DNA from: Phallusia mammillata
Taxonomy: Eukaryota
Assembly: GCA_965637545.1 (NCBI GenBank)
Contig: OZ281495.1
Location: 31,868,001-31,932,000, forward strand
Length of the DNA: 64,000 nucleotides
Direction of reading: 5' to 3'
The translations under genes were made by a program, and so were the position numbers. Each line of letters starts with the position of its first letter. Position 1 is the stretch's first letter. The notes beneath the pieces were generated by a model. That model was not told the DNA's origin. It made no database searches and saw only the letters and a list, made by a program, of their open reading frames with translations. Below, piece after piece: positions 24,701-57,900 of this stretch.

Positions 24701-25017
24701 TAAATATAAAAAAATAAAAAACGTAAGGACCAAGCTACGATAATTCCATGTGCAGTAAAGTTTTCAAATAATTTGGTTAATGGAAACAAATGCAAAAATA
24801 CTTTGGTATTTTACGTGCGAGGCTGAGATGTTTCGTTGGCACTTACGTTCCCAATAAGGATTTCTTGAAATAACAATCCAGCTCGAACGGGTGAAGGTTT
24901 TAACCGCGGCAATACATTTCGGCATCGTAATTGACCGACTTTCTTAACCTCAGCTTGTGTTTCCATCTAGAGTTTTCACTTTACACAAGACACGCTGCAT
25001 GTTTGAATAGCTTTATA

Positions 25018-26547
25018 ATGGATACCAAGTTGCTGATTCTGGAGGCGTGCGTTGGCGTCTGTTCCCTGGTTGGAATTTACATAGCACTGGTGCTCTCGTG
25101 GTTTCAGTGCAAAAAACGGAAACCGCCAACTCCACTCGAGGTTCCCAACATACTTACGCCAGAGACATCGTTCCACAGTGAAAAGAAAGAGCGTCATGGC
25201 GAGAATGGAAACGGCACAAATGGGCGAAATACTGTTCAAAACGGCTCCAACGGACGTCGTAGGCTTCCCACCGGACAACAGGACTTGCAGACCCTCCGAC
25301 ATGGAAGAACTGTACAAAATGGTTCTAACGGACGTCGTACGCATGCAAATGGACAACGTGACTTACAGAGCCTCCAAAATAGAAGTAACTCTCTCCGCAA
25401 CAGCTCAAACGGACGTGGTACTCTTCCTAATGGACAACATGACTTGCAGACCCTCCAAAATGGGAGTAACTCTCTCCGCAATGGAACAAATGGGCAACAA
25501 ACTGTTCAATATGGTTCCAATGGCCGTCGTAGCCTTCCCAACGGACACCGTGGACAACCACCACAACAAGGGGATTACACTAGAGGGCCGCATCCCTCAG
25601 AGCATCGTCAGGATCATGTTCTAAGGCGTCCGACAACACGCCAAGCAATCCCAGTCACAACTAACCACGTCGTCGCTCTGCAGCGCTTATGTCTTTGCGC
25701 GTCGTGGCTTGTGCTGGTGAGATACGGTATGGAGCACGCAGTCCTCATCTTAGCAACCACCGAATCCTTCTCCTCCATCAGCTGTGAGATCATCCTCCGG
25801 GTCCACATCGTCTTTTACGTGGTCCCTCTCACTCTGCAGTACATCTTCCTCTGGATGAAACAACGCGTGCTGTATCTCAACCCAGTGTTGCGTCACAATA
25901 GCTGGGGATGCACCAGTTGCGTTAGTTGGCTGGTGATCATTATTTTCATCGTCAGCGAAGCCGGATCGGTCGCCATGTTCATGATCAGTGAGAAGTACGA
26001 AAGAAATCTGACAGCGAATGCAACAGCAAACTTCACATGGGCGCCATGTGTTCCAATGCAAACAGGAGTGCTTCAAGACTTTGCACCGTGGCTAGTGCTT
26101 GGTCTACTGGCTTTGTTTTTTCAAGCTCTGTTCTTTGCTTTGTTTATCCAACCTCTTGTGTGCAAGGCAAGAGCAATCAACGTGGTAGAGATGGCAATAC
26201 GACGCCACCAAACGAAAAGCGTCTTCCCAAGAATTAAACGAGTCTTTCTGGTGTCAAGCACGAGTGCGATTACAGATCTGATCGCTATTGTAGGCTCAAT
26301 GGCTGCCGGTGACCTTTACATCTCACTTGTAATCCTGGATTTCAACCTCCTCATCAATCAGATATGCCTCGTTCTCTCCTACCAGTCGTGGAAGATTAGA
26401 TTCTTCCCTATGTGCTGTGAGGAGCCTCCGGAAGAGTCCCTTTTTTCGATGGGATTTCATAAAGATTCCTCCACGAGCAACGGAGCAGGATCTTCTAGGA
26501 GTCCGACATCTTCAACATCCACAGGAGTGGAGGAAGTCTTCGGATAA
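25018..26547 (+). CDS. Intronless orphan 7TM (GPCR-like) protein B, 509 aa, paralog of 17396-18520, with a repeat-expanded ICL1
   Basis: First ATG at 25018 (the track ORF starts at a TTG). Shares LCLxA..R...E (TM2), C.. ILRxHI and YxxLWxxQRxLY (TM3), and WxxRxFP (after TM7) with protein A. The loop between TM1 and TM2 is about 185 aa of NGSNGRR/DLQTLQ repeats. Confidence 0.88.
   Translation: MDTKLLILEACVGVCSLVGIYIALVLSWFQCKKRKPPTPLEVPNILTPETSFHSEKKERHGENGNGTNGRNTVQNGSNGRRRLPTGQQDLQTLRHGRTVQNGSNGRRTHANGQRDLQSLQNRSNSLRNSSNGRGTLPNGQHDLQTLQNGSNSLRNGTNGQQTVQYGSNGRRSLPNGHRGQPPQQGDYTRGPHPSEHRQDHVLRRPTTRQAIPVTTNHVVALQRLCLCASWLVLVRYGMEHAVLILATTESFSSISCEIILRVHIVFYVVPLTLQYIFLWMKQRVLYLNPVLRHNSWGCTSCVSWLVIIIFIVSEAGSVAMFMISEKYERNLTANATANFTWAPCVPMQTGVLQDFAPWLVLGLLALFFQALFFALFIQPLVCKARAINVVEMAIRRHQTKSVFPRIKRVFLVSSTSAITDLIAIVGSMAAGDLYISLVILDFNLLINQICLVLSYQSWKIRFFPMCCEEPPEESLFSMGFHKDSSTSNGAGSSRSPTSSTSTGVEEVFG
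25200..25560 (+). repeat. Degenerate coding tandem repeat (NGSNGRRxLPNGQxDLQxLQ) within 7TM-B ICL1
   Basis: Recurring caaaacggctccaacggacgtcgt and ggacaaca(t/g)gacttgcagaccctcc units. Confidence 0.85.
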
Positions 26548-29206
26548 CTAACACGTGGTGTGACCTTTATTTGACCTTGTTGTGCGGGAGAACACGTGGC
26601 AGGAATTGATAAGGCAGCAAAGATGCGAGAGGTCCAATTAAGCTGTGACACGCTTGAAGTCCGAATGAGGCGTTGCAGGACTAGGTCACGATTTAAACTC
26701 GCTGGAGTTTCGGTTCAGTAAATGCGGAGGGAGAGAAATTTAAAACGGTTTAAACGCATTTTTACTGTCACGTTTGGATTCGAATCAATTGTTTTCGGCT
26801 TGAAATGAACTGTAACAGGTAAAATCGGTTGCGCCCTACACGTTGTCTCATCGCTGAAATGCAGAAGTACATGATTTTGTTTCGCTGACACACTGCTTTA
26901 AAAATTCACCAACAAAATATGAGAAGGCATAATCTTATCTAAATCACCGACCGAAATAAATGATATATGATAAAATCAAAAGAGCATTACGACTCCAGTT
27001 TTTGTTTCTTTATATTTGTTTAATTGCGTATTTGTTATGCCCGTTTTGTATAGTTCCGATTATTACTGAGTTTTGTTGTACTTTGAGAAGTAGAATGTAT
27101 GTTTTCGTGTAAAACAAAAAACGTCTCAAAAACGTAGCCATATTGTTTTTCATTTTAGATGTTTCTTAGAGCTTCACTCGGTAACAACATTGCGTGTAGT
27201 TATTTAGTAAACATGAAGGTTTCTACTATGGAAAGACCAATAAGTTACATTTCGTTTCTCGTTTTTTTTTCAGTGTTTGTTTTGTTATACATACCGTTAC
27301 TCGTACTTTTGATATATGCGCTGTAATAAATGTCGCTTTGTTTTTTCCTGCTGTGGTTGACATGGGGATGATATGCACGACCAGTTTACACGCGAGGTTT
27401 TTGGCCTGTTTATGTTGTACATAGCACATGATATAGACAAATTGACGGTTTAATGTCTGTCTATTGTCAAGCAAAAATTCAACACATTTGCGGGAGTTTA
27501 AGCTGTTAATTGACATGCGCTATCAATCAACAGTTTCGAAGGCCTATTTTTAGACACACATTGCTATTCTTCTATTTTGCAAAATGTTGACTGGTACTGT
27601 GTTAAAATCCTTTTTATTGAGCTTCATGAAGCAAAAATTTTGGCAAACTTGTTTGTGAAACATGATACAGAACGGGTTTTGTGTTGTCCAGCAAAATTTG
27701 TTTGAATACAGCTGCTTGCAATTAAATTGTGTTAAAGCTAAAATAGTTTACTGGTATATGAAGGGCTTAATGGTATTTATGCTTCAAAATGTCAGTGGTC
27801 AAGCAGAAGTCATAACGTTTCAGACATAGGAAGATAAATCCTAAACACATGTTTATCAGACCTAGCAATTTATTCGCGCAGCTTGTCAAAATTACTTCGA
27901 GGAAATGAAGGATTGAAGTTGTAGTGAAACAAATCTTGTGTGTCAATCACATAGATCCAACATCGGTAGATTCATTGAAGGAAACATTTAGCGGTTCGTT
28001 GCACGTGAGGGAAACAATTCAACTTAAATTACATCCCAAAATTCAACTTTATCCGCATAGGTTTTCTCCTTTTTAACAATGTTTGTCGTTTTGCTCATGG
28101 ACGAGCTGTTAGTGGGTATTGTTGCGTGAATACTATGTGCAGAAGTTGAAATATTTTACCGTTGTTTTGAAATCAAGTAAGATAAAATACCGTTTTGTGT
28201 AGGATAACAAGTAACAAGTTTTAGTAAAATCCTAGAGATGGACAAAAAAATTGACAGATTGTTACAAACCCTAGTAATTATTTCTTTCCGAAGTCCTTCA
28301 AAATTTTGAAGGTTTGGTGGATGTGTTTACATCGGTAAACGACGATTAGTGATTAGCGCTTGGCTATCGCTTGCCCTGGTAATAAATAAACCAAACACAT
28401 GATTAAATCTATTAAACCAAGTCCAAAAACGGCCAAACGGACTTGGCAAATCACAAGAAACGGAGTTTGTTTTATTTTACAATCGTCACGTCCCGGTAAG
28501 CACAGCAATGGAGGGAGTAACAATTATTTGCCGCAAACCATCCAGCAGCAGTTTCTCGTCGTGCGATGAAGTTGTTTACGTTCAAAATGCTCGTCACGCA
28601 TCACTGAGCAGGTTTGTGACGTCAGTGATCATTTTTTCTTTGCCACCTCGACGGGCGACGATTGTTGGGGGCAGGCTTCTTGAAACGGGAAGTGAGTGAA
28701 GGCGGTGTGTTGTCGGGTTTAAGGGTTTCCTGGAAATATAAGAGACATTCTGAAACACTATATACCATAATCTGATCTTGAGTTGAATGACGAATATAAC
28801 GACTCAAATAAACGTAAAAAGCGACAGGTTTTATTATTCAGACGCAAATGTTTATGTCGTCATCATTGATATGGCGGGCTACATCAGTCACTCCCGTTTA
28901 TGAACACTCGAGTCACATAAAAGGTTGATAAAAAGGTCCGAAACAAGCGTCGAATAATAAATGATTCGTGCGTAAAACTTATGAATTCGGTTATATTGAA
29001 GTTGATTTGTAAAAACACATGGCTTTACACACTTTTTAGGGAATACACAAAATGGATCTTAAAATCCGTTTAAGACATAACCTAATTAAACTTTTAAATA
29101 TGCAAAATTTAAACGGGTTGAGAAAAAAAGTGTATAAATGCTACATGTAAAATTTTGTCACAACATTTTTTTGTAAACGTACTTTTCCCATTTAATGATT
29201 ATGTAG

Positions 29207-32200
29207 TTATACTTTACTCACCTCTGACAATTCTCGCATGCTTTTGGCTCGACCAATTGTAGCCGGCGAACTGCTATCCCAGAAATCGCCCATTCCTTTC
29301 ATTAAATCTTCATCAAAATCAGCTTCGTCTTCTTCATCACTTCTTCTCGTGGACCCAATAGGTTGTGTCTCTGATCTCTTGTACCTCCTGCTCCTGGGAT
29401 TCTTAGGACCTTCAGAGAGGATCTTCTCCAGGTTGAGCTTCTTCTTCATCATGTCTTCACTCATCATCCGTCTTCCTGGAGGATTTCCCAGAGCCGACTT
29501 TCCGGGAGTTTGATCCTCTTCCTTCGCGATCACCTTCTCTCTCCACGTGACTGGAGGATAATCCCCTTCTCTTGTTCCTGACACCCACGAGAGTCGTTTC
29601 TTTGGCTCCGCGGTCTTCTGTCGGGAAAAGGTCGGACCACCTGAGCCTTCTGCATTGTTCCTGAACTTCCGAATTTGTTCCTGTTTGAGGGAAAACCTTC
29701 CTGGTACCCCACGAATAAAATTCTCCTCACTTTTTTTAACGTTAAACTTTCCGACAAGAGCAGACACTGACTGATTCTCCTCACTGGTGGGAGTTGAAAC
29801 TTGCTCTTCTGATTTCTTTCTCGTGTTCATTTTTACATCCGGGGATCCGGTTGATTCCTCCGGGATCTGGTCATGTGACCATCTCAGATCCACCATGCTT
29901 GTGTGATAGCGTGGCTTTGGCATCACACAGGGCATTGTCCTTCTCCGTGTGTCGCTTTGTGAGGAAGTTGTCGGTGAGGCTTTGGATAAAGTGAGCGACG
30001 CTGTCGTGGTAACTGTATTAGGAGACTTACTTTCATCCTTGATACTAGGACTTGTTTCTCGTTCCAATTCATCCTCGCCACTGTAACCATCTTCAACCTC
30101 TTTGCCTTCTCGAACCTTCGGACTTCCACGGGAACTTTTTCCTTCCGATATTGGACTCGCGGTTTCTGTCGTGTTCTTATCTTCCAAAGCCTTAATCTCG
30201 TTCTCAAGCAACTTTCGTTCGAAATGTTTCACAATCGACGGTTTCTTCTGACTGAATTGCGATTGTCGAAACCGAGAAAACAAATTCTTCATCTCCAGGG
30301 AGTTATCCGTTTTGCTTCGTGTGTATCTCCTCATTCTTGACTTCGGCTCCTTCTTTACTTCCTCATTGGGGGAGCTTCCTTTCTTTCCTTTCCGTTTGTT
30401 CCGTGATTTGGTTTTATCCCCTTTTTCCTCCATATTATCTTCAGATGATGAGCTCAACCTTAAATCCTTGTCTCCTCTTCTTAAAGATGAAGACCTCGTT
30501 CTTTCGCCCCTCGACTTAGATCCATTCTTTCTTTCAGGACTTTTTCCATCTTCCTTTTCCGCGTGATCCTTTGGGGTGTCGAGGAAGGAAAGCTTCTTTT
30601 TGATCCAGTTTTTCCCACTTTTATCTTTGCTCACCTTCTCCCGTTGATAAGACACCGAACTCTCATTCGGTTTTACAGAGGCCAAAGCCTCTACGTCACG
30701 CCCTAAAGGTAAGTGACAGGCTGTTGCATCTTTGATATTCCCACTAGATCTTCTTCTTCTTGATGTAGATGTCACAGGAGCAACGCTAGAGTCCAACTCC
30801 GAGCCTCCGGATGCAAGAGGAGAACCTTGCCTCTGGAATCGAGGATCAGTGATCACTCGGAGGACATTTCCGCTCGCATCCTTCTCAATAGTGATGCTGG
30901 GTTTCGGTCTGACAGGAGGAGGAGGAACTTCTTCCACATTTATTGAAGGAAAATCTTCTTTTCCCGGAGGCGTTTCCACCACAAAGTCATCGGGAACATC
31001 CTGGCTGCTTGATCTACTGATGTTGTTTTCCGGAAGATTTCTTGGCGCGCCGAGTTTTTCGTCGCTAGGCGATTTAGTTGATGACGTAGCCTGTCTATGA
31101 CGCATACGTGGGGATGAGGGGAATTTTGAGGAATTTTTGACGTAGCCTTTTTCGGGGTCAAAATAGGGAGTGTGCAAGAAACCCTTCTTGTCTTGTTGCT
31201 GATCATCATCTTGGCTCTGTTTTCGAGGTAAAGCCGCAGCAGCAGGTTGAGCTTCGTGGGATGATTTTTCAGTGTTGTGGAACAAAAGCTTTTGGTGAAG
31301 ATTGGGAAGTTTTTTTGTCGAAGGTTTATCGGAACTTGATGACCCCGGTTTGTAATCGCGGGGAGTCGAGTATCGTTTTTCAACTTTAACAAAATCAGTC
31401 GGAGAATTATTCGGTCGCCTTTTGACTTCACTTCTGGTTGGTAACTCAAACTTCTTCACCCTCGCAAGTTGCGTGTTCTCCCGTTTTAAAGGTGAACCGG
31501 CGGTCACAGAATCCGTGCCGCTTTCCGTGAAGGCGGGAATGCTGCAACTTGTGGTGGGGGTGGATATAAGTGGGCTGTCAACGTCACTGGTCACGTGATG
31601 AGCGGATTGGTTGAGCGAAGTTCGGCGCTGCGGCAAATTGGACGAGTCCTTCGTTCCTGGCACTTTGCACGAGTTCGACCGACCTCTCATCTGGTCTACA
31701 GCGTCTTGTGACGTCACTATTTTCGCGCCCCTCGCATCCGATTGTCTGCTACATCCTGCCACGTCATCGTCGCCTTGTGATGTCACAGACACTTTTCGCA
31801 GATTTCCTTGGGGCGACACCTGGTGGCGGTCACGACTCGAAGCACGCGGTGAGGAGTATGACGTCACAGTCGATTTTGTGACGTTGCCGCTTCTGGGCGT
31901 TGACCGAGCGCCTTCCTTTGATCCTCGGCCTTCTGCGTCCGCATCCATTGTATTGAGGTCATGGCTGATCTTTTCAATCTGCTTTAGCGCCTGAAACATG
32001 AGATGATGATTAATTTGTGATTTACAAGCAGAGTTGTAAACGAGTCTGAAATGGCGACCTGAACCCAAACATACACAAGTCAATAGGCCGACTCAAACAC
32101 GATTTTTTTTTCACCCTGTCCGAGTTCAGTGCGAAATTATAGGTTGACAATAGTGAAATTGCCAGAAAAAAAGGTGTGAAGTCATGTCCGAATCAAGTCC

Positions 32201-35200: not shown

Positions 35201-38200
35201 ATATCAAAAAAGTTTAGACCTCTTTCATTTTTTGTTTAAAGATTTGATATTGTAAATTTTTGCTTCGTTTATTTAACGTTCTTCGGACTAAATGTCAGTT
35301 TAAAAAAAGTTGTGACTGTCTAAAATCTTGAAAAAGTGTTTTATGAAAACTGATCAGTAACTTAGTCCGAATATTTTACACGACTTTGCATTGCACATGG
35401 GCATGCCACAGAACTGTGGGTTGGGCCTTAAGGTTGAATAAAACGAGCTTCAGTTTACACTGGCTCATATATTTTACCGTAAAAAATGAATCAAAAATTC
35501 GATTTTCGCATCTAAATCTGGTTTTATTTAAAACAAATTAAGTTCGGGCCCGCTTATAACTCTGGAGTGCTGAAATTGTTGGCCAGCATGAATACTAATT
35601 TAATAGAAGCCACAAATCCTACAGCTATTATATTTTTCCAGCAGAACTTGTAAACTTAACTCAAACACGGGTCCGCTCTTGAGTGGCGTTATTATCGGTA
35701 AGCATGAACACCTAACCACTGTTTCCATCTAATATTTGTTAAAACAAAAGAGAAACCTCACCGCTTCGATCTTTTCCAGCATCACTTGTCTCGTCTTATC
35801 CCAGTTCCTCCTCTCGCCGTCGAGGGACTCCACGACTTTTTTCTTCTCCTCCTCGAAGAATCGCTGCTGTTCCCGCATTTTTATCCGGAGCTCGGTGTTC
35901 GACAGTTCCATGGTCGTCAGGTGACGCTCGTGAGCGGCTAGTTGCTGTTTGAGCGAGTCGATTTCGTGGCTCGATGATTGGCGTTGATGCTGATTGTGAC
36001 TGGTGTGAGACTCAAGCTGTAAAGGTCGGTGGGTTAAAAGCGGTTTGATCATTTGTTCTTGCGATAATACCTATAACTTACTTCTATATGTAGGGACAGC
36101 TTATTATATATATAATACATAAACCCAATAATGTTCTTCTGGCAAATGTATTATTTTAACCAACGTTTCAACGTCCTATTCTGGTCGACTTCATCAGGTT
36201 AATAACACTCCGATCGTCAAGTTAAACCAAAATTAAACCAAACCAAAATGGGACCAAAACCTTTTGGAGGTAAAAAATAGATTTGCCAGAAGAGTATTAT
36301 TTAGATGAAATATTTATTAACGATTTGAAGTAAAGGAGTAGTATTAGGTCATTTAGTGACAGTGCATTCAGGAAAGATTGCGTAAAAGTGTTTTTAAAAC
36401 CTGACACTTATTTATATGACAACCACCCAACTTAATTACAAACCAAAAACAAACAACGGCCACAAAAATTCATGTTTGTACATTAACGATGAGCAGAACA
36501 TCTCCATAAAAAGAAAAAAAAACATAACTTAGCTAGACAAACGGCACAAGGAAATCAAGTGCTCAACGTTTTGAAGAATTCCCCTATTAACTGAGGCTGT
36601 ATATATACATTACGTATATGCAAGTCTCTGTGACGAAATTAATTCCCTAGTGGATTTTTCACTATCTGTCCCATAGGAGGTCACATGTTGAATGGGTACA
36701 AGATGTCGGGACAACTTGAGACAATTTATTCTAAGCCCAATTTAGATAAAGTATATATATGCTGACGTGACGTTGGTTGTTGTTTACGAAGTGAAATGAG
36801 GTAAACCAGCGTCGAAAATAGTTTTTTTTTTTTTGAAAGAATAGTTTCTTAGCTTTATACATGTAGATCCGTAGACAAATAAGACAGTGTGTAATTAATA
36901 TTTTGTGAATTTTACTGCATCTGTGTTTTCGGGGCACGGAATATCAGGTTGAACTTAGATGTAAAACCCAAATTACTAAGGCCATGAAGAATGTGAAAAC
37001 CCATTTACAATTTAAACCAAGTTTTTTTTTTTTTTTTAAACCTAGCAATATCGGCCTACTGTAATCCATAATTATTTTAAATTACGTTCCCTCAGATCAT
37101 AGCATCGTATTTTATTTTTACACATGATACGTTGAACTCGGGACCGATTCTGTAATTGCCAATATACAAAAGCTTTTACTAAGTTGGTGCTTGGTTGATT
37201 TGACTTTGTTTCTATGCCAACATGTTTCATGCTAATGTTTAAAAGTAAATCGTTTTTATTAGACCTAAATAGACAGCTTTTTCCCCGCTTCGAACCCAGG
37301 ACGCTCCCGAAGACAAATCCAGATGAAGATTCTGCAGACAGTGCACACTGTTTTGACTTAAATGGTCTCATCAGTGCATCTGGTGACAAGAGCTTGGTTG
37401 CGCAATAAAGCCACTTTACAGCACCCTGTATGTTGGGTGCACTGTCTGCAGGTTTTATCATATATTGGCACGATGCACTAAAATACGGATAATATAGTTT
37501 TTTGAGCAATAGGTTTAGGAAAATGTTGATGTAAACAACAATTACCACCAGAAACCCTGCGGCTGCATATTTTGATACAATCGGTACTTCATAACAAGTT
37601 TAAAGAGCTTTTCCGGCAAATGTGATTTTATTCCGACGTTTCAACGTCCTATACAGGTCGTCTTCTGTGTTATTTACCCTGATGAAGGCGACCTGTATAG
37701 GACGTCGAAATGTCGGAATGAAATCACATTTGCCAGAAGAGCTATTTAAACTTGATTCTATGCCTGGTAGCAATAGCTTATATAAACGGTACTTCATAGG
37801 TTTACTTATTTACGTTTCTTATGATCCGCAGCAATTCATCTTTCTCTGCATCCCAGATCTCTCTCATCCTCTCATGGTCGGATTGCGCATCCGCTCTCTT
37901 CTTTTCTTCACTCCTCAACTCAACCCGGAGCTCCTCAAGGATTTTCTTCAGGTCAACCAAAATCCTTTTGCTCTCGTCAGCCTTAAAAATATATATTGCA
38001 TTGCTTAGATGAAATGTGATTTACTTTTATCATATTTGACAAAAGATTAAAATAATAAACAGGGGATAACAGTTTCCAGAATGGATTTAAAGTAAGTAAT
38101 AAAGTCAAGAAAAAGAACCAATAGAGTAGTTTCTGTCAAAACTGTTTGCAGTGGCCCAAACAAACAGCTGTTTAAACTACTATGTTTATTGAAAAAGCTG

Positions 38201-45000: not shown

Positions 45001-48000
45001 TTGCTGCAGGCCTCTTGTAATGTTGTATAAACAGCAATGTTGTCTCGTGCACAAAAATTGAAATAATTAAGTAGTGCTAAGCAGCAGATAATGCACTCTG
45101 TCTTTTTTGACCTATAAGGTCTCATCAGTGTAGCTGGTGACAAGAGATCTAAGCAGTGCTTCTGTTTAAAAACCATACAGCACTCATAACTTTAAAGTGC
45201 ATGGGAGTCGCTAATCTTCTTTAAATACACCTTTTACTGTTTTTCACATGTATGTGTTTTCATTTTTTGAATCACTGGGTGTGTTTTTACGTTGGCGAGT
45301 TTGGTATTTTCACGAACTGTGTTGCTTGCAGCTTGTGCGAGCCGAAACATTCAAGATCGGTTGCGGAATAACGCACTGCTCCACTGCAAACTCACTAGAG
45401 GAAGTTCTGCAGAACGCTATTATTGTGGTTTGCAATTACGCCCCTAGCGGAAACTGGAAAAGCGGGTGAGAATTTATTTCATGAAGTAAAATAGTTGCAA
45501 GTCAAGGAGTATTTCAAAATACAAATATTTAAGTACAACTTAGGATAGGCAATTAGGAATACTATTCTATTCTTAAATTGTTCTGGAACAGTTGAATCGA
45601 TCCCTCCGGATTCCCTAGTGCGTATCCCAAAGTACAACAATCGCAATAATTCATGGAATTGGATTCGTAAGGAAAATAAATACCTTATTGTTAACATTGG
45701 CAGATCAGTTTTTACAATTCATTCACCAAAATCGGTTGTTTTGTAGTTTTGTGTACGTAGTATTTCGAAATATATTATCATTTTTTACAAATTAGAAGCA
45801 AATACTTCTGACCCAAAATCATCTAACAACGAAATTACGAATGTTCCTGAAACAGTTTGACTCAGTGATCGTTGACACTAACGTGTCTTGTGTTGTGGGG
45901 GAGGGATCCTGTGAAAAGCATTTATAGGACGCCCCGAGTACGGAACCCTATCGGTTTCAAATGTCTGTATAAGGGTCAACCGCCACCCGTCAGTCCGCTA
46001 AGTACCTTAAATTAAAACTTATCATATGTCTCCAAACCAGACATTCATTCATTTGTGTGTCGCGCCACTAATAAGTTTAACTTCATTAAGCCAATCACCA
46101 TGAGCTATAAATACTTTGCAGACCGGCGTACGAGGTAGGCAAAGCTTGTAGCGGATGTCACGATACAGACTCATGCGAGAAGAAGTTATGCATCAACGCA
46201 GCACGTGATGTCGATCCACCGCCGGGTACGTAAAAATGTCGGTAACACTCAGTTTTAATCAACATCTTTAAAGGATTTTCCTAAATCAAAGTTTTTTGGG
46301 GGCCTGGCTATTTTTGACTTTGTGAAGTTTCTTTTGATCTGGCTGTTGCCCACATGTTCGCCAAAATCAAAATACTGCATGAAGCGCGTTTTGTAATCAT
46401 TATAAATTTGACTGAACTAACCTAATAAAATAGAAACGATTCAATTGCTTGTGTTTAAATTTATAGGCCCGCCGCCGTTAAAGAGTTAAATAGTTTAATG
46501 GACTAACAACAACATGATATGCTGCAGACAGTGTACACCGTTTGGACCTATAAGGTTTCATCAGTGCAGCTGCAACATGGTTGTTAAAACGCGAATAAGT
46601 TTACATGTGGCCCTAAAACAGATTCCTATGTGTCAAGCAGCAAATTATTCGGCCAAATAGTCCTTATCAATGCAGGGTTTTCAAACACTTACAAACATGA
46701 CAAAAACTATTTGAATGTTCTTTGTTTGTAGCTGGCGTTTGGGAGCCCTGGGGAGAATGGACGCCCTGCAGCGTCTCTTGTGGCATTGGTACAAAGCGGA
46801 GACATCGATTGTGCAGCACGTTTGTGTCAACTGACTGCCAGGGTTCACCCTCACAACTGAGTCTATTCTGTGCCCCGACACGTGTCTGCCCAAAACCGCA
46901 ACAAACCACAGCGCCTCCAGTGGCTGGAGGTAAGTTACATTTTGTATCAAAGTCTTGTGCTTCGCGTTTGAAGTACTGATCCCAAAAAGTAACATAACCA
47001 AAATTCTTCTCATCTCTTTCACGGCTTTATAACTTTCATAAGCTTTTCAATTAGTGGAGTTGAAATCATGGCATGTTATTTTTGAAAGGTTGAATATTAT
47101 GAAATGTAAAGTGTATGTTTTTATTTTTCAATTAAAAAAACTGTTTTGGTAGCCAACACATAAATTTTCGTTTGCGACGCCTAATTATTACTTCGCTTTA
47201 ATCCTGTTTCCATGGCCGTTGGTCCGAGCGCACTTTTTGGCTTATTTCGTCTGATCGGACCCAAAACAGCAATTCTTTTAGCGTTTTAGCGAATTTCCTC
47301 GAAAGGAGGTCCGATCGGAACTTTTTGTTTGTTTCGAAAGTGGTTGCCGATGTCTACTTTTAAACAGTCTGGTGAAAAGATAGTTATTATCAATACCTTT
47401 AAAACGAATTCTAGAATGAAGTTACTGCAGGTAATTATTGTTTTAGTCAAAAGTAACGTATTTGCTGCTGGTCCGATCGGACCACAATTTGTAAGATAAC
47501 AGGATATTTGTTGTTCTATAACCAACATTTTGTATGTCCCATAAAAAATGTAAAATCCTTTGTAACCAACATGCAAAAACGCATATCGAGACACAAACCT
47601 TTAAAAACGACGTGTAATTGCAACTTATTTCCTTCAAACTTAACACAGAGTGGTTGGCTTGGGGCACGTGGTCGACTTGCAGTAAGAGTTGTGGGGGCGG
47701 GAAAAGAACCAGATCACGTGACTGCGACACCGGCGACAACCGAGATTGTGTGGTACCTGCGAGTCAACTCTCAATCTGCAACGCCCAGCGATGTCCGTCA
47801 AGAACCAGAGGCAAGTTGACGCACAACTTATTGTTGTTTGTTTTGAATTTTACGATTTAACTTGTTCACGAACGTTATTACAGCGCTTTTGGTAGAATAC
47901 CTGTTACATTATTAACCGGTATAGTTAGAACCATATTTTTAACATCCGAACGAAAAACAAAACAAAACAATCTTTGGTCGATTTATGACTGAATTCTATC

Positions 48001-49882: not shown

Positions 49883-50041
49883 CTTTCAACCATGGACAGG
49901 GCCGGAACAATTAAAGGAGGCTAGGGGGTGGCCGAAACCCCCGAGGGATTGACATTGTCACTTTTATTTTTCCCTATATAACGTTGTTAGTACAGTTTGC
50001 GGTTTTCGTCTTGTTTATTTCGGGTCTCACTGGTCGTAGTG

Positions 50042-50092
50042 TTATTACCCTGATGAAGGCTACCTTAATAGGGAGTTGAAACGTCGGTATAA
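50042..50092 (+). ncRNA. Penelope-type minimal hammerhead motif (family B) 160 nt downstream of the CAP-TSP1 gene 1 stop
   Basis: ttattacc-CTGATGA-A-GGCT.CCT-TAAT-AGG.AGTT-GAAA-C-GTC-ggtataa. The core, GUC triplet and stem I are intact. It is followed by the family tail tatgcctgg..aca..ttatata. Confidence 0.65.
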
Positions 50093-51952
50093 AAATATTT
50101 TTACCGGAAGTAAAGCATTTAGCTTATTTTTTATGCCTGGCAACAACAGTTTATATATTGTGAGTGCATTTTAGTTAAATCACATTTATTGCTCGTCTCT
50201 TATAGTATTCCACAAATATGGAAGCTATATGTGTTGCCTTATGTTCCATTTTTTTAAAGCATCTTTCATCAAAAGACTTTTTCCAAATACATAACTGCGC
50301 CATTTACAACCAATTCCCAAAGCAAGGAACCTTTCACTTTAAACCTCTCCAAGTCTCCATTTTAGAAGTAGCACAAAAATAGGAAACTTTGTGCATCTAT
50401 TTCCAATGTACAAATTGCATGCTTTTTTTGCGTCAATACATTTGCATGTCGTGATCAGTAAGCTTGGTTTGAATTTTGGCGGCTGGTGAAATTAATTTAA
50501 ATGTAAGGTTATCGGGCAGGTGTCCCACGAAACAAAAAGGTTACAAAGCTAGACTGGTGGAAAAGTATGTAGTAAGGCAGAAGGTAATTAGCAGACTGTA
50601 AACATTAAAAAGTCTGAAGTCTTAAGATATATATATATGTCAGCTAAGTAATAGGCCTCTTTGGTATTTAATCCAATCTTTTTCAAGAATCAAGGTAGTT
50701 AGAGGGGATTAAGATTGTAAAAACTAATAGAAACGTTTAAACAGTTGATTTTGACTATTTTAATAAGTTCTACAGAATATTTGGAAAGGTCTTTTGTCAG
50801 TAATAAAAGGTATACCGTACAAAAATCAGCGAAAGGGTAATTTTGAAGTGTAAAACACTAAACCGTTTACTAAAATCATATAAACGTCGAATACAAGCTA
50901 TGCTTTGAAACAGACTAACTTTGTGATGCTTGAAACAGCAACAGAAAAATAACTTGTTGTTATTGTTACTGCGTGAAGTATAGCATTGTTGGTACAGATT
51001 TTATACAAAATGTGTTGTTTAGTTACAGGTTTATACTTCTACAGCAACATTGCTGTTACAAATATATTGTAAATGCTCTAAAGTCCACAAATTCTGCTTT
51101 GGGGGTCAAAGAGAATGACGCAAGGCCGCGTGAGAATTGAATTGGTTTCGGTATTTCCGAATTAAAAGCGTGACACAGCAAATTGGCAAGGCCTCGATAT
51201 TGCTAATACATGACGGCTTGATATTATATCATGGGACCCCAGATATTAAATCTCGTTTAAACTCCATATATGGTTTGTTAGAAACCCACGCATAAAACGA
51301 TGTGACAACATTTTTAGAAATTATATCATTTCCTCAAGCCGCTTTGCAAAGTAACGAAGTTCTGAAGGGAAAAAATGTTGATGTCAAAGGCATGTGTTGC
51401 GTCATAGGAGCGTTTGTTGCGAATAAATAAATGAGCGAATGACCACTTCCGTTCTTTATTGTCAGGTGCAGTTAGCTGGTGGTACGTCACAGCTGTTGTA
51501 AACAACTAATGCGTTAGCAATATATTTGTGTGACTGCAAAGTGATTGTATTAGTTACAGTAACAAAAAAATGGCAGAAGCAGGCGAATTCTTGGATCTAA
51601 ATTACAAAAAAACAACGCCAGAACAGGGCAATACGATAACAGATAAAAGCTTTAATGCACGTGGTGTAAACGTAACTTCAACAGTTTAGATCCCTACAAT
51701 TGAGTAAAAATGCAGACACAATAAGTTAGTTTTTAATTTTTGTGTCATAGTGTATGACTTGTAAAAGCTTATTATATGTTTACATATGTTATAATTAGTC
51801 TAGATGTGGATATAATACCGAAGGAGTGTTTAGATTTAAGGGAAAGCTGATACAAATCTTCTAATCATTATTGTGTTTTGTTCACAGAACTTTTTTTACA
51901 GTACCTGGTTTAATAACATAAGTTTAGCAGCAAAAAAAACGAATGCTTAGCT

Positions 51953-54900
51953 ATGATTTGCACCACATACACACGCGTTTGTTTGCTAACAATGCTTGCT
52001 ATGACGTACAGGATGCGCGCCACGCAAGGGCAGGAAACTGGTGACGTAGCGAGGTAAGGTTGGTGTGCAACAGTAACGAGCAATTTAATTTACAATTTTC
52101 ATCAAGTTTTAATCAAAATGTGGCTAGAAAATAAGTAAGAGCATGTCTATGTAAAGTCATAACACGGTATAAGGCCTATGGAGGGATCAACATAACACAC
52201 GCTGTCACGAATATCTGCTATAGCCCAAACCGTACATTCTGGTCCCCATAAACATGTCCAAAAAATAAAATGTAACAAGGATTAAGCTGCTGTCTATTGC
52301 TTCCAGTATTTTTTCACTGTCCATGACTTATTCTTCCATAGAAAATAATGTGGTGATACCAAATACCGCATGATACCGGATGGGAAACCGCATGAAAAGC
52401 CCTACGGTATACCGCATAATAAGCCGCATGGTATGTGGAATGTAAGAGTACAAGCCCCAACAAGCGTAAATAAGACTAGATTGTAGTGTTGTTGTTTTTT
52501 CAATTACAAACCCTCGCCCAACTCGAATAGCTCAAACAGGAAAGCGATTTCAGAAGTCCGCCAAATTAAAATTTTACATGAAGTGTATTCATGTCCACCT
52601 AAACTGCGTACTACGCGGTAACACGCAGCATCATGTGGTAGTTAGTACCACCGGAAAATGATACATCGGTGTTACTTCGAAGCGGTTGTTTTAATTAAAC
52701 TCAGGCTAACAACGTTTCAACTTTTCACCGGAACTGTGGTTTATATTAGTGCAAACCTGGCCCAGTAAGAGCACGGAGCTTTGACTGATACGTGAATTTA
52801 AAGAAACATGCTTTAAACCCACAACGCACTTCTTTATTTGGCATCAAACTGGGCATAAATAAATATTGGTAAAATAAATCGTTTGACCTGATATTGTTTA
52901 CCATATGTTTCTTACACTAAAAGACCATATTTTGTTAAACACTATTTTTGAAAAATGTTATCAGTGTTTGTATAAAAGTAAAGAGCCAATACATGATAAG
53001 CTACAGAGAATGCGCACTTGTTCGGCTTGAGTATCGCAAGGGGCTACATTAGCTCTTACGGCCGATCTCCTGTCACCAGCTGCACTGATGAGACCTTATG
53101 GGTCGAAACAGTGTGGACTGTCTTCAGCTTAAAAGTGTTTATCTGCTGCTTTAACAGCCAAGTCATTGCCATTTTTACCATTTAGCCAGCAACATGATGA
53201 ACCACTAAACATTACGAGCAACTCCGGAGCACCAGCTGCACTGCAGTCCAGCAATCTTATTCGAACTTACGCCATAACAGGTGAAAAACTATTATTGTGT
53301 AGTTAGGTAAACTCTTATGTTGTGTCCGAATTAGCTAAGTCTGTTGAAATTTCCCCACTATTTGAGACAGGTGTTCTTATTACATGCCCAGGCCACATTC
53401 TGTTATCTTCAAGCAAAGGAAATTTTCATTTAAGGTGTCCGCGCAACGCATTTCCTAGCATGTCAAGTGTTAAATGTTCAAAGTTTTAACGGCAGACTCA
53501 TTTCCTTGCACGCCTACCACCAAAATTGTTGACAGTAGTCCCATATACAAGCCGGAAGCCCCAAGACAACGCCAACATGTACTTCCTTAATGGCAAGGTA
53601 ATCCAAAACTTGGGAAGTGCCGCTCCAAGAACGTTCCTTGTTTGTTAACCGGGGCATATTTTCAGTACACAATGTCTGAAGATTCAACGGTAGAAATATA
53701 TCAACCCAACATTCTAGGGCCTCGTGAACTATGGTTTATAAATGATCGCCGTTGGTCTGCATGAACGCTTCAGGGCTGATCCCAGTACGTGTGTATGTTC
53801 ACCTTAGTTGATAAATGGTCGAACTGGTGATCACCTACTAAGAGGCTGACATGTGCAGCATACGAGACAGGCAACGGTTAATGTGATTCCACTTTCGGCG
53901 GGTTCACCACTGAGCCTGTGTAGCTCAGATGGGAGAGCAAAAGTACGAGAAAAACTTTTGTCGTGGGTTCAAATCTCACCGTAAGCTAGATTTGTCTGGC
54001 CTGTGCCTTGCCTCAGGGAATGCTAGGGAGAGCGGCTTGATTCGGCACAGCGCCTTCATGGGCCTGGCTAACTGTGAAAGATTCTAGAAGCGACAACTAG
54101 GAAATTACATTTGATAATTTTACAGCCGCACTCAAGACAACGTTTCTGAAAGCGCACAACGATGGACGGTCAATCGTATCGCCCTCAGCCAGCAATATGA
54201 GAAAGCTAACCTGGGATGATGCATTGGAGAAGCTGGCCACTGGTTATTCAAAGCAGTGCACGTTTGCACATAACCCGGTAAGTTAATTGCAGTAAATTGT
54301 AAATTGCAAGTTGTGTGGAAGCGAAAAACGAAACCAAACAGTGTCAAAGGGTTTTGGTTCCAGCTTCAATCTGGTTGTGCTTTCCAATTCATTCCACGGG
54401 AAATTTATAGATGCCAGCAAAAACTTCGCGCAACCGGTGGCGTACCTCCCCACCCCAAAAGTAAACAAAAAAATTAAAATGAACTGTACATTTTCGAGTT
54501 TTATGAAGTAGTGTTTTGGTACAAAGCAAACAAGTTTTTGCGTCGTCCTTTCTAACCGCCAAAAAGTTTGTTGCCTCAAAAAATACTATTACGCCTCGGG
54601 ACACAAACATGCCGTCATCTTATTACGTTTGTGACATGACGAGCTATTGGTCAAAGCTAAGTGCATTAATAGCGAGAAAGTCATCAGGCGAAATTTCCAT
54701 CCGGAATTTCTTTAAACGTTGACTCATTTTTCTTTCCATTGTTATTGGCACTGAATTGATGCTGTGATCTTAGTTACAATGGATAGCATAGCCAGACCGA
54801 AAAATCTGCCAGAGGGCCTTTATGCAGTAATTAATAGGTGCTCTTATAATAGCAACCAGAGTTGCAAGCCGGGCTGCGCTTTTCGGGCCGGGTTCGGTTT

Positions 54901-57900
54901 CGGGTTTCTTAAAAAACGGGTTCGATTCGGGCCTAACTTTGTGTCAGTATTTTATAAAATAAATAAAACTTGCTATTAAAAGTAGCCAGTTGCAGGTCCT
55001 CGCCTAATGTCAAACAGCCCTAACACGCCTTGTTTAAGACCAATTGTCTATTGTTTTAGTTGTCTTGGTCTTTTCCGAGGCTTTAATGTATACGCCTGTC
55101 AATCAAACTCTCCGGCCTAAACGGGCTTCCCAAAAACGAATCGGGTTTGGCTCAGATTCTGGATAAAATTTCGAGCCCACTTACTACTCTGGATCAAGTT
55201 ACGTTGACCCAACAATAAACCACAAATACTTTAAGCCAACGTTTACATTCCTTTGGCAGAATCGAGCTCACTCCAGATTCTACGTTGGCGAAAACATTTT
55301 CCTTTCTACTCGCCGACCTTTCAACTTACGCTACGCCAACGGTTCGGTTTGGGCGTGGGAAGGCGAGAAGAAGGACTACACCTTCTCAAATGGAGCCTGC
55401 ACTCCGGGAAAAATGTGCGGCCATTACACACAGGTAGGGTTGAGAAAGTAAGGTCTGGATACAAATGTTGGTAGCACAAGTGTTATAACATTACAAGCAG
55501 ACTTAAAAGGCAAGAAATGAATGTGTGGCCATTATACACAGGTAAGGTTGAGAAAGTAGGGACAGGATATATATGTTGGTAGCTTTCAACTGTCATTTCC
55601 ATAAAATATGTGTTTATTAAGGAAACAACGGCCCAAATAGACAAAGCGACACGCTTTATTATTCAAACGTTTCATCAAATGCTCATTTCAGTGATATGAG
55701 GGGCTACATTCGTTTATAATCACTTGAGTCACATAAAAGATATGTGTTTATTTATTATTTTAAAACAGATTAAAAAAGCCACTTCATGGCAAACTTGACA
55801 GCCAACCGTAACTCAGTTTCTTTAAACCGGTGGTTTTTAAAGTGGGCGCTACCTGAGACGTGTGCAAATAAGGGTGCGCTGAAGATTAAAAAAGCGAATG
55901 AAATAAGTGTGGGCACTTTGGCTACTTTTAGGGTTCTAAATTCTAATACTAAATTCAAAGTTTATAAACTGGTGTTAGGAATATAATACCATTATCAAGA
56001 CTTTCTACTTTCAGAAAAAGTTAAAATAAAAAGCAAAGGGGCGTTTTGAAATCAACAAGCCTTTGAGAAGGTGGCATAAACGCCACTAACCTAAATACTG
56101 GTCTAGGCCGCCTTTGCTTCTTTTAAACAACATTGTGAATCTGTTTCGCAGAACGTGTGGGCCGACACATTCAAAGTTGGATGCGGGGCGAGTTTGTGTT
56201 CCCAAATCAAAGTTGAGAAGAAAATATACAGAGATGCGACGATATTGATCTGCAACTACGGGCCGGGAGGCAACATTCGTGGAAGGTGGGACTATACAGT
56301 TCATTCACACTCCGAAAGTACAGACTTGCTACTGCACTAAAATCCATTACAATTTGTTTTCTCTTGTTTAACCTTTTTTCAAGCTTAAATTTGCCTTAAT
56401 TTTATTTTACGCATTGCCGAGATTTCATGCAGTTTTATGTTTCGAAGTGACAATACTGTTTTTATAGTCACAATTCTTTTAAAACAGATTTGCTTCTTAG
56501 TTTCACAAATGATTCGAACCAAGGATATACAATAATGTATTTGCAAGAAATATACTACTGCTACCATTAAACAAAGCTAGTTATCAACAATTTAACCGTG
56601 ACAGATGTAATTAACATTACAAAAAAATCCGTAAATAAACATGTTTGTTTTACAGGCAGCCGTATAAAGTGGGGCCTGCTTGCAGTCAATGTGCGAAAGG
56701 CGACACTTGCCAGAAAAAACTTTGCACAAATCCTATTAGAAGCGCCGCGAAGCCAGCAAGTAAGTAGACGCAGATAATTGAAAATTGAAAAACGTTACTT
56801 CAGTCGCATTAATTGAAATCCAATTTACATTAATTAGCCCAGGGAAACTGGGAAACTTTAATAAATAATTATCAAGAAACGTTACTGTGTTGGAGCAAAA
56901 TAGCACAGTGACAATAAATCAATACAACTCGCACATGATCGAAGTCAATAAATAACCAACAAGGTTTATATTTATAAAAAGATAATCACCAAGTAAAGAT
57001 AAGTCCGGTTTTTCACGATAAAACCAATGTAAAAAAACCCATCACTTTAGACCAGGGGTTCTTAAACTGGGGGGCGCGCCCCCCTAGGGGGGCGTGAAGG
57101 GTTCGCAAGGGGGGCGCAGCACAAATCGCAAGGGGGGCGCAGCACAATCGTCCAATTGTATTAACCAAACTTTTCCCACTGCGGGCCGCCGCATAGTTTA
57201 CATGCCCTTGTGCCGTCTTCTCAAACTTAGCCCATGAGGCGATTTTTATATGTGCGCCAAGATATGGTCTTTTTAAAACCCCATTTAAAATCTGTTAAAT
57301 TATATAGTTAGTCTCATCTTACAAGGAATGCTTGTATATTATGTCATAAGTGACACAATAAGGCAATTGTTTGCGCACAATTAACACTTTTTGTTTTGTC
57401 TGTGACGTAATAAACTGGGTTTGGATCAATCCTGGGCGTTGCAATCCTTTGAGAGTCGGTAATATTAATTTTACATGTCGTAACAGTAAACTTTCGTAAG
57501 GAGTAGATTAAGTTTTGACAGTAACAAAGTTATCAATACGATTTGGCAAACCAAAAATTGGGTCGCGAGCCGGATGAAATGACCTCGCGGGCCGTAGTTT
57601 GGTGACCCCTGTACTATATAGTCGGCTGTACATTCTTTATTTGTGCGCAATTTCGCATTAGAGATTGCCCTGACTTTGAGTGAATCAACAATTTCTGGGC
57701 AACATATGCGTAGTTTAAAAGAATACTGGCAACGTGTCTCTGTGTTCGCAAAAGCCTACTTTTTCGCAACTTATCAGTGTTGAAGTGGCTTTTTCCAACG
57801 TTCGGAACTAACTTGACAGTAGCTTAAAGCGGACCTACCATGTATGTTGTTTCCAAAAAACAAGACAAGCATCATTAGTGCTAACGTTTTTTAGGGGGGG

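What the first reader, a model, noticed from the sequence alone, without database searches (positions are those of the whole stretch)
53078..53129. Intact-core hammerhead ribozyme on the sense strand, 63 nt upstream of a 3' splice site
Seen: all conserved core nucleotides (CUGAUGA, GAAA, A15.1-U16.1, GUC cleavage triplet) and stems II and III closed by loops, i.e. type I topology. Stem I has a single C-U mismatch at its second pair. It lies in intron 1 (52054-53185) of CAP-TSP1 gene 2, on the transcribed strand, and the scissile bond (53122/53123) is close to the expected branch-point region. It is the only one of four family-A copies in the window with an unmutated core. Inference: co-transcriptional self-cleavage could compete with or modulate splicing of the exon that follows the signal peptide, giving a ribozyme-based expression control. 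Alternatively it is simply the youngest insertion.
Basis: partly seen in the sequence, partly recalled or inferred. Interest (0 to 1): 0.85.

Follow-up and report, generated by a model that had tools for sequence, protein, structure and literature searches.

The report
Hammerhead ribozyme retroelement copy in intron
The sequence really is a complete hammerhead self-cleaving RNA motif, but it is one ordinary, slightly decayed copy of a retroelement present in thousands of copies in this genome, and nothing indicates that it controls the gene it sits in.

Summary
The type I hammerhead motif at 53078-53129 (+) is real. All core nucleotides are present, helices II and III are closed, helix I is open, there is one C-U mismatch, and the scissile bond is at 53122/53123. 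My descriptor expects 0.02 such motifs per random 64-kb window. No Rfam hammerhead model reaches its gathering score.

It is not a dedicated regulatory device. It is the 3' end of a repeat with an inverted 5'-truncated twin just upstream (52979-53024). Two other copies in the window are 5'-truncated solo copies. In two DNA runs, depth over the motif is more than 1000 times the single-copy depth. This is the insertion pattern of Penelope-like elements and their non-autonomous derivatives. The scan has already noted many sense-strand intronic hammerheads elsewhere in this genome.

This copy is about 6% diverged, so an intact core is expected by chance. Its helix I mismatch shifts the predicted fold to an inactive hairpin, leaving about 1e-5 of molecules in the active fold, against 0.16 for the majority sequence.

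The gene lies on the + strand, but proposed exons 1 and 2 have no RNA support. An alternative in-frame model places the ribozyme about 1 kb from the acceptor. Proposed exon 2 itself contains a fragment of the same repeat.

Verdict: a neutral retroelement relic. The splicing-control idea is not supported.

The parts
53078..53129 (+). Complete type I hammerhead motif: helix I open, helices II and III closed, full core.
   Evidence: Read directly. Only hit of my descriptor in the window. Chance expectation 0.02 per window.
53085..53091 (+). Core box CUGAUGA (C3-A9).
53092..53104 (+). Helix II hairpin: 5 pairs including one U-G, loop UAU. The other three copies have A instead of G at 53100, which gives 4 pairs and a 5-nt loop.
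53105..53108 (+). G12 A13 A14 A15.1. G12 (53105) is kept only in this copy.
53108..53121 (+). Helix III hairpin: 5 pairs, loop GUGG. The other copies have C at 53116.
53122..53123 (+). C17 and the predicted scissile bond (53122/53123).
53124..53124 (+). Private substitution: U here, G in the three other copies. It gives the C-U mismatch at pair 1.2/2.2 and is the main reason the active fold is disfavoured.
53056..53077 (+). Leader conserved in the family, just 5' of helix I. It contains the upstream GUC (53072-53074) that the Rfam type III model used.
52979..53024 (-). Inverted, 5'-truncated and more decayed twin of the ribozyme's 3' half plus tail (head-to-head arrangement).
   Evidence: nhmmer hit at 53026-52994 on the minus strand. 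Arm alignment score 14 against 9.5 +/- 1.6 for shuffles.
53025..53055 (+). Spacer between the two arms, homologous to the spacer of the copy at 37326-37461.
   Evidence: upstream-only score 27 against 11 +/- 1.8 for shuffles
53130..53153 (+). 3' tail of the element. It mirrors the outer end of the inverted twin and reaches to within about 30 nt of the proposed acceptor.
53208..53243 (+). Fragment resembling the family's leader plus the 5' strand of helix I, with a 14-nt exact match at 53230-53243. It lies inside proposed exon 2.
37326..37397 (-). Second copy of the family, G12 to A. Its own inverted twin is at 37437-37461 (+).
45076..45151 (-). Third copy: 5'-truncated, G12 to A plus a 4-nt insertion in the core. 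Antisense in an intron of CAP-TSP1 gene 1.
46515..46587 (-). Fourth copy: 5'-truncated at about -8, G12 to C, G10.1 to A. Antisense in an intron of gene 1.
51953..52053 (+). Proposed exon 1 (signal-peptide-like, donor GAG|GTAAGG). Alternative donor at 52040/52041.
   Evidence: No RNA coverage.
53186..53280 (+). Proposed exon 2 (95 nt, open in one frame, restores the reading frame). Unverified.
   Evidence: No RNA coverage.
54126..54278 (+). First CAP-domain exon of gene 2, phase 1, supported by its paralogue in gene 1 and by homologues.

Best explanation
The motif is the ribozyme carried near the 3' end of a short non-coding retroelement of the Penelope-like kind: either a PLE pseudo-LTR fragment or a PLE-dependent non-autonomous derivative. 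The element inserted on the + strand into the 5' region of CAP-TSP1 gene 2, most likely into an intron. It did so in the usual way for such elements, as a 5'-truncated copy with an inverted 5'-truncated twin at its upstream side.

The copy has since drifted by about 6%. Its catalytic core is intact by chance. One of its private substitutions (U at 53124) breaks the second pair of helix I. As a result the RNA is predicted to fold into an inactive extended hairpin, and in element context its helix I 3' strand pairs with the inverted twin.

It is therefore a neutral relic with little or no self-cleavage and no dedicated role in splicing of the host gene.

Shown: the motif, the family, the architecture, the high copy number and the fold energetics.
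Inferred: the mobilising machinery, the neutrality and the low activity.
For: - Four copies in the window share only about 70 nt around the ribozyme.
- The copies at 53 kb and 37 kb share about 100-180 nt more upstream. The copies at 45 kb and 46 kb stop at -21 and -8 from the CUGAUGA box. This means variable 5' truncation with a common 3' end just after helix I.
- The 53-kb and 37-kb copies both have inverted truncated twins.
- One RNA contig from another copy shows the reverse-complemented ribozyme joined head to head to the ribozyme (loose end at 53078 in X3).
- PMC8557442 describes exactly these features for PLEs: HHR near the 3' end, strong 5' truncation, an adjacent inverted 5'-truncated copy, and a tail.
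- DNA depth in the bin holding the motif is 614,792 against about 400-475 single-copy in X1, and 262,271 against about 131-151 in X2.
- Fold of the motif alone: HHR fold -11.8 against MFE -18.3 kcal/mol. The fraction in the HHR fold is 1e-5, against 0.16 for the majority sequence. With G at 53124 it would be 0.28.
- The same inactive hairpin is the MFE in every context folded.
- Earlier notes of this scan list many sense-strand intronic hammerheads in this genome, and one followed-up case was resolved as a PLE-type head-to-head insertion.
Against: - No RT/GIY-YIG ORF is linked to the family in this window, so the link to PLEs rests on architecture alone.
- Helix III (5 bp plus tetraloop) is longer than in the canonical metazoan or minimal PLE hammerheads described in PMC4209133.
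- Nearest-neighbour energies ignore tertiary contacts and proteins, so some cleavage cannot be excluded.
- Loss of G12 in all three other copies is not explained: CpG observed/expected is 0.99 in the window.
- This copy is the least decayed of the four and keeps G12, which is also what purifying selection would produce.
Confidence: 0.8

Rival explanations
1. The copy is catalytically active. By cutting the nascent intron on the sense strand, it lowers or tunes production of spliced CAP-TSP1 mRNA.
For: - Complete core on the transcribed strand of the gene.
- Least diverged of the four copies, and the only one with G12.
- The concept has a precedent: the CPEB3 intronic ribozyme modulates maturation of its mRNA (PMC10919898).
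Against: - Member of a family of the order of 1000 or more copies, and one of many sense intronic hammerheads in this genome.
- The active fold is predicted for about 1e-5 of molecules.
- The inactive hairpin uses segments that are transcribed before the 3' strands of helices III and I.
- A slow hammerhead placed in an intron did not impair splicing in vivo; only a fast ribozyme did (Dye 2006 and Fong 2009, as summarised in PMC2995048).
- Only 63 nt separate the site from the proposed acceptor, which leaves almost no time window under the CPEB3 timing logic.
- The exon downstream is unverified.
Confidence: 0.06
2. The copy cleaves slowly, but without consequence for the host. The intron is cut after commitment to splicing or after excision, as for any other transcribed copy of the family.
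For: - Intact core.
- Family RNA is present in both RNA runs, at depth 628 and 886 in the motif bin, against 3.4 or less on the host gene's exons.
- One family RNA contig from another locus ends exactly at the position equivalent to C17 (X3 record 18).
- Exon-tethering results.
Against: - The same fold predictions as above.
- Contigs are not reads, and a contig end is weak evidence for an RNA end.
Confidence: 0.12
3. The motif is a chance match or an artefact.
For: No Rfam hammerhead model reaches its gathering score.
Against: - 0.02 expected per window under the descriptor.
- The motif is the conserved heart of a repeat family whose majority sequence folds as a hammerhead at minimum free energy.
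- DNA contigs of two runs carry the locus without any difference (records 1, 2, 9, 10).
Confidence: 0.01

Closest known systems
Hammerheads of Penelope-like elements and their non-autonomous derivatives (Cervera & de la Pena 2014, PMC4209133; Craig et al. 2021, PMC8557442; Li et al. 2026 preprint, 10.64898/2026.07.22.740005)
   Same: Type I hammerhead near the 3' end of a retroelement repeat. Strong and variable 5' truncation. An inverted 5'-truncated twin at the upstream side. A short tail. Very high copy number. Dispersed copies in introns.
   Different: Helix III here is a stable 5-bp hairpin, and helix II has 4-5 bp. The minimal metazoan PLE motif has no or a 1-2 bp helix III and a 7-8 bp helix II. 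No RT/endonuclease ORF was linked to the family in this window.
Metazoan non-LTR retrozymes (Cervera & de la Pena 2020, PMC7229834)
   Same: Non-coding repeat with a type I hammerhead, expressed as RNA. Invertebrate versions have a stable helix III and cleave as monomers.
   Different: Retrozymes are tandem arrays of 170-400-bp monomers, each with a ribozyme. Here there is one intact motif and only a degenerate fragment 156 nt downstream. Circular RNA could not be tested.
Conserved intronic ribozymes with a proposed role in mRNA biogenesis (amniote intronic hammerheads, de la Pena & Garcia-Robles 2010; CPEB3 HDV-like ribozyme, PMC10919898)
   Same: A self-cleaving motif on the sense strand of an intron.
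   Different: Those ribozymes are single-copy, conserved at orthologous positions across many species, and demonstrably active. This one is a drifting copy of a high-copy repeat with a destabilised helix I, and conservation could not be tested.

Membership tests
Hammerhead ribozyme, type I | Conserved core: C3-A9, G12-A14, A15.1-U16.1, and H17 not G | tested here: met
Hammerhead ribozyme, type I | Three helices around the core, helices II and III closed by loops, helix I open | tested here: met
   Helix I has a C-U mismatch at pair 1.2/2.2.
Hammerhead ribozyme, type I | Score at or above the Rfam gathering threshold of a hammerhead model | tested here: not met
   Best is Hammerhead_3 at 26.2 bits against 48.5. 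The type I model is below 24.4 bits. RAGATH-1 hammerhead scores 16.5 against 56.3.
Hammerhead ribozyme, type I | Catalytic secondary structure is thermodynamically accessible | tested here: not met
   HHR fold -11.8 against MFE -18.3 kcal/mol, fraction about 1e-5. It is met by the majority sequence of the four copies (0.16). This is a model prediction only.
Hammerhead ribozyme, type I | Helix I / loop II tertiary contacts needed for activity at physiological Mg2+ | tested here: inconclusive
   No internal loop plus closing stem beyond the 7 positions of helix I could be recognised by eye. The conserved 5' leader might play this part.
Hammerhead ribozyme, type I | Site-specific self-cleavage | not testable with these tools
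   Only assembled contigs were available.
Penelope-like element (pseudo-LTR) or PLE-dependent non-autonomous element | Hammerhead near the 3' end, with variable 5' truncation of copies | tested here: met
Penelope-like element (pseudo-LTR) or PLE-dependent non-autonomous element | Inverted 5'-truncated copy adjacent upstream | tested here: met
   (copies at 53 kb and 37 kb). (head-to-head junction in an RNA contig of another copy).
Penelope-like element (pseudo-LTR) or PLE-dependent non-autonomous element | Repeats flank, or are related to, an ORF with a telomerase-like RT and a GIY-YIG endonuclease | tested here: not met
   No such ORF next to any copy, and no Pfam hit in the long ORFs of the window. 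The rest of the genome could not be searched.
Non-LTR retrozyme | Tandem array of 150-450-bp monomers, each with a type I hammerhead | tested here: not met
   One motif only, plus a degenerate fragment 156 nt downstream.
Non-LTR retrozyme | Linear and circular monomer RNAs | not testable with these tools
   Contigs only.
Regulatory intronic ribozyme (CPEB3-type or amniote intronic HHR) | Single-copy, conserved at the orthologous position across species | tested here: not met
   High-copy family. Orthologous loci could not be fetched.
Regulatory intronic ribozyme (CPEB3-type or amniote intronic HHR) | Lies in an intron on the sense strand of an expressed gene | tested here: inconclusive
   Gene strand confirmed. 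Exons 1 and 2 are frame-consistent but have no RNA coverage. An alternative model exists.

The most novel reading that the evidence does not exclude
Proposed exon 2 (53186-53280) would be an exonised piece of the same hammerhead retroelement complex: it carries a 36-nt fragment of the element, with a 14-nt exact match. The intact ribozyme 63 nt upstream of the exon's acceptor would retain enough activity to influence whether that young exon is included. That would be a retroelement supplying both a new coding exon and a self-cleaving switch for it.
Probability: 0.04. Interest if true: 0.55.

Novelty: new member of a known kind. Interest (0 to 1): 0.15.

Why it matters
Little, as it stands. It is one more dispersed copy of a hammerhead-bearing retroelement in an animal genome that holds thousands of them.

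It is useful as a worked example in two ways. An intact core in such a copy is expected by chance. A single helix I mismatch can decide the predicted fold.

A regulatory role would matter only if locus-specific cleavage and an effect on the host mRNA were shown. Even then the principle is already known from CPEB3 and the amniote intronic hammerheads.

A genome-wide question that the scan's many notes raise could be of real interest, but it cannot be answered from one window: are sense-strand, fold-competent copies depleted from introns, and why is G12 hit so often?

Tried and rejected
1. CpG decay as the cause of G12 loss. Rejected: the C11.1-G12 step is a CpG and two copies read CA, but CpG observed/expected in the window is 0.99. 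The third copy has G to C.
2. Type III reading suggested by Rfam, using the upstream GUC at 53072-53074. Rejected: the 10 nt between that GUC and the CUGAUGA box cannot form a helix I hairpin.
3. RNA evidence for exons 1 and 2 and for ends at 53122/53123. The two RNA runs are assembled contigs and give zero coverage on both exons. Only exon 56149-56283 is covered (depth 3.4), and the table of molecule starts and ends was empty.
4. Search for the annotated protein of this gene, to read its N-terminus. The exon 3 peptide against 1.84 billion representatives gave at best 60-62% identity, so the gene's own product is not there. Related CAP-TSP1 proteins (P0017, P0028) do have roughly 100-residue linkers between signal peptide and CAP domain. 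A linker exon is therefore plausible, but nothing more.
5. Paralogue comparison for the 5' exons. Gene 1 shares only the CAP and TSP1 exons and the phase-1 intron before the first CAP exon.
6. Scan of metagenome contigs for the family pattern: 0 matches.
7. Target-site duplication around 52979-53153: none convincing by eye.
8. DNA joints from the ribozyme to 53753-53767: each is a single contig with sides of 20-24 nt between two high-copy repeats, so I did not interpret them.

Full report
**The observation**

Reading 53078-53129 on the + strand gives every element of a type I hammerhead:
- helix I 5' strand 53078-53084
- CUGAUGA 53085-53091
- helix II 53092-53096 / 53100-53104, closed by UAU
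- G12-A13-A14-A15.1 at 53105-53108
- helix III 53108-53112 / 53117-53121, closed by GUGG
- C17 at 53122
- helix I 3' strand 53123-53129

The only flaw is C53083 opposite U53124, the second pair of helix I. The scissile bond is 53122/53123, which is 63 nt before the AG at 53184-53185.

A descriptor that asks for these features finds this one site in the window, on either strand. It finds 6 sites in 300 random 64-kb sequences of the same dinucleotide make-up, i.e. 0.02 per window.

- Nothing but a tRNA reaches gathering score in the window.
- With permissive thresholds the best hammerhead match is the type III model at 26.2 bits (gathering 48.5). It uses an upstream GUC at 53072-53074.
- When that GUC is cut off, the type I model still scores below 24.4 bits, and the RAGATH-1 hammerhead model gives 16.5 bits.
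- The type III reading is not viable, because the 10 nt between that GUC and the core cannot form helix I.

**The family**

Three more copies lie on the minus strand at 37326-37397, 45076-45151 and 46515-46587. G12 reads A, A and C in them. The copy at 45 kb also has a 4-nt insertion in the core, and the copy at 46 kb has G10.1 changed.

I first thought the G12 losses were CpG decay, since C11.1-G12 is a CpG. The window has CpG observed/expected of 0.99, so that explanation is not supported. The recurrent loss remains unexplained with three copies.

The majority sequence of the four copies has a perfect 7-bp helix I and folds as a hammerhead at minimum free energy.

**What the element is**

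Anchoring the copies at the CUGAUGA box shows the following:
- The copies at 53 kb and 37 kb share homology for a further 100-180 nt upstream. The upstream-only alignment score is 27, against 11 +/- 1.8 for shuffles.
- The copies at 45 kb and 46 kb stop at about -21 and -8.
- All four end shortly after helix I.

So the ribozyme sits at the 3' end of the unit, and copies are 5'-truncated to different extents.

A profile of the four copies also picks up weak hits on the opposite strand directly upstream of two copies: 52994-53026 next to this copy and 37435-37454 next to the copy at 37 kb. Arm-against-arm alignment confirms inverted, 5'-truncated twins at 52979-53024 and 37437-37461. One RNA contig from another copy shows the reverse-complemented ribozyme joined head to head to the ribozyme (loose end before 53078 in X3).

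Strong 5' truncation, an inverted 5'-truncated copy at the upstream side, a short tail and a hammerhead near the 3' end are the published structural hallmarks of Penelope-like elements (PMC8557442). PLE hammerheads and their huge numbers in metazoan genomes were described in PMC4209133. A 2026 preprint argues that animal retrozymes derive from PLE pseudo-LTRs.

The motif here differs from the canonical and minimal metazoan versions in having a stable 5-bp helix III. I found no RT/endonuclease ORF in the window. I therefore file it by architecture only.

**Copy number and expression**

In two DNA runs that hold the locus, the 174-nt bin containing the motif has these summed contig depths:

| Run | Depth in motif bin | Flanking single-copy depth |
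|---|---|---|
| X1 | 614,792 | about 400-475 |
| X2 | 262,271 | about 131-151 |

The tool warns that this is not a copy number, but it indicates a family of the order of a thousand copies or more at 90% identity or better.

Both RNA runs contain family contigs, at depth 628 and 886 in that bin. They carry 3-5 differences from this copy, so they come from other loci. One of them ends exactly at the position equivalent to C17. This is a weak hint that some members cleave.

Earlier notes of this scan list many sense-strand intronic hammerheads in this genome. One was followed up and resolved as a head-to-head PLE-type insertion present in thousands of copies. The same kind of thing has therefore been found before on other DNA of this genome.

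**Is this copy likely to work?**

It differs from the majority of the four at 53070, 53100, 53116 and 53124, about 6%. The others differ at about 7-10 of 70 positions. At 6% divergence about 40% of copies would keep 15 core positions untouched, so the intact core needs no selection.

The helix I substitution is not harmless in the nearest-neighbour model:
- The hammerhead structure scores -11.8 kcal/mol, against -18.3 for an extended hairpin. In that hairpin the 5' strand of helix I plus C3-G5 pairs with the 5' strand and loop of helix III.
- With flanks the gap is 9-10 kcal/mol.
- The constrained partition function puts about 1e-5 of molecules in the hammerhead fold, against 0.16 for the majority sequence. 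With G at 53124 it would be 0.28.
- The competing hairpin is made of segments transcribed before the 3' strands of helices III and I, so it should also form first.
- In the context of the whole element, the 3' strand of helix I pairs with the inverted twin.

These are model predictions without tertiary contacts or proteins. They lower the odds of efficient cleavage but do not exclude it.

**The gene context**

CAP-domain and TSP1 exons on the + strand downstream are clear, and they are shared with a paralogue upstream in the window. The first supported exon is 54126-54278, entered in phase 1, as in gene 1.

However, they have no coverage in the two RNA runs, where the gene is barely expressed.

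A second in-frame model uses a weaker donor at 52040/52041 and splices straight to 54126. In both models the ribozyme is intronic and sense. Only in the first is it 63 nt from an acceptor.

Homologous CAP-TSP1 proteins have long linkers between signal peptide and CAP domain, so a linker exon is plausible.

One oddity concerns proposed exon 2. It contains a 36-nt stretch resembling the element's leader and helix I 5' strand, with a 14-nt exact match at 53230-53243. A weaker collinear similarity continues beyond it (local score 44, reached by 4 of 500 shuffles). In addition, the element's tail reaches to within about 30 nt of the proposed acceptor. So either the exon lies in, or was recruited from, the same insertion complex, or it is not an exon.

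**Mechanism and comparison**

Published experiments argue that a slow hammerhead in an intron does not prevent splicing, while a fast ribozyme does (summarised in PMC2995048).

With a destabilised helix I, a very short distance to the proposed acceptor and membership of a high-copy family, I rate a regulatory role at about 6%. I rate harmless slow cleavage at about 12% and a neutral, essentially inactive relic at about 80%.

**Verdict**

It is a new member of a known kind and of low interest on its own.

Noticed in passing
window 53208-53243 (inside proposed exon 2, 53186-53280): A fragment of the hammerhead element's leader and helix I 5' strand, with a 14-nt exact match at 53230-53243 to 53074-53087. 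It lies in the proposed coding exon, 156 nt downstream of the intact copy. It may be a partial tandem copy or an exonised repeat.
   Followed up: partly
window 53845-54061 (tRNA-like at 53913-53988, +): A tRNA-Ser(AGA)-like sequence (Rfam tRNA 40.5 bits; ARAGORN) embedded in a repeat. Its DNA depth is several hundred times single-copy depth, and it is present in the RNA runs. Probably a tRNA-derived SINE in the next intron.
   Followed up: partly
window 53753-53787, 54932-55279 and 55628-55801: Three further high-copy repeats in the introns of gene 2, by DNA depth (tens to hundreds of thousands against about 400). 55627-55739 resembles 28798-28923 in the window.
   Followed up: no
window 37582-37798 and 50039-50157: A second, unrelated hammerhead family: a palindromic element with a CUGAUGA...GAAA core, a long helix II and almost no helix III (the minimal PLE type). 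One full fold-back copy lies next to the 37-kb copy, and a 74%-identical copy lies at 50 kb.
   Followed up: no
window 37374, 45128, 46564 region (G12 of the three minus-strand copies): G12 is substituted in all three other copies (A, A, C), although the window shows no CpG depletion (observed/expected 0.99). This may point to an A12 subfamily or a mutational or selective bias, and needs a genome-wide count.
   Followed up: partly
window 29207-32083 (-) and 24931-26547 (+): Uninterrupted ORFs of 958 and 538 aa with no Pfam and no PDB sequence match. The protein-atlas neighbours of the 958-aa ORF are uncharacterised, probably disordered eukaryotic proteins, with scores of 0.87 or less.
   Followed up: partly
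window 43681 and 54126: The first CAP exons of the two tandem CAP-TSP1 paralogues are both entered in phase 1. The 5' exons upstream of them share no detectable similarity.
   Followed up: partly
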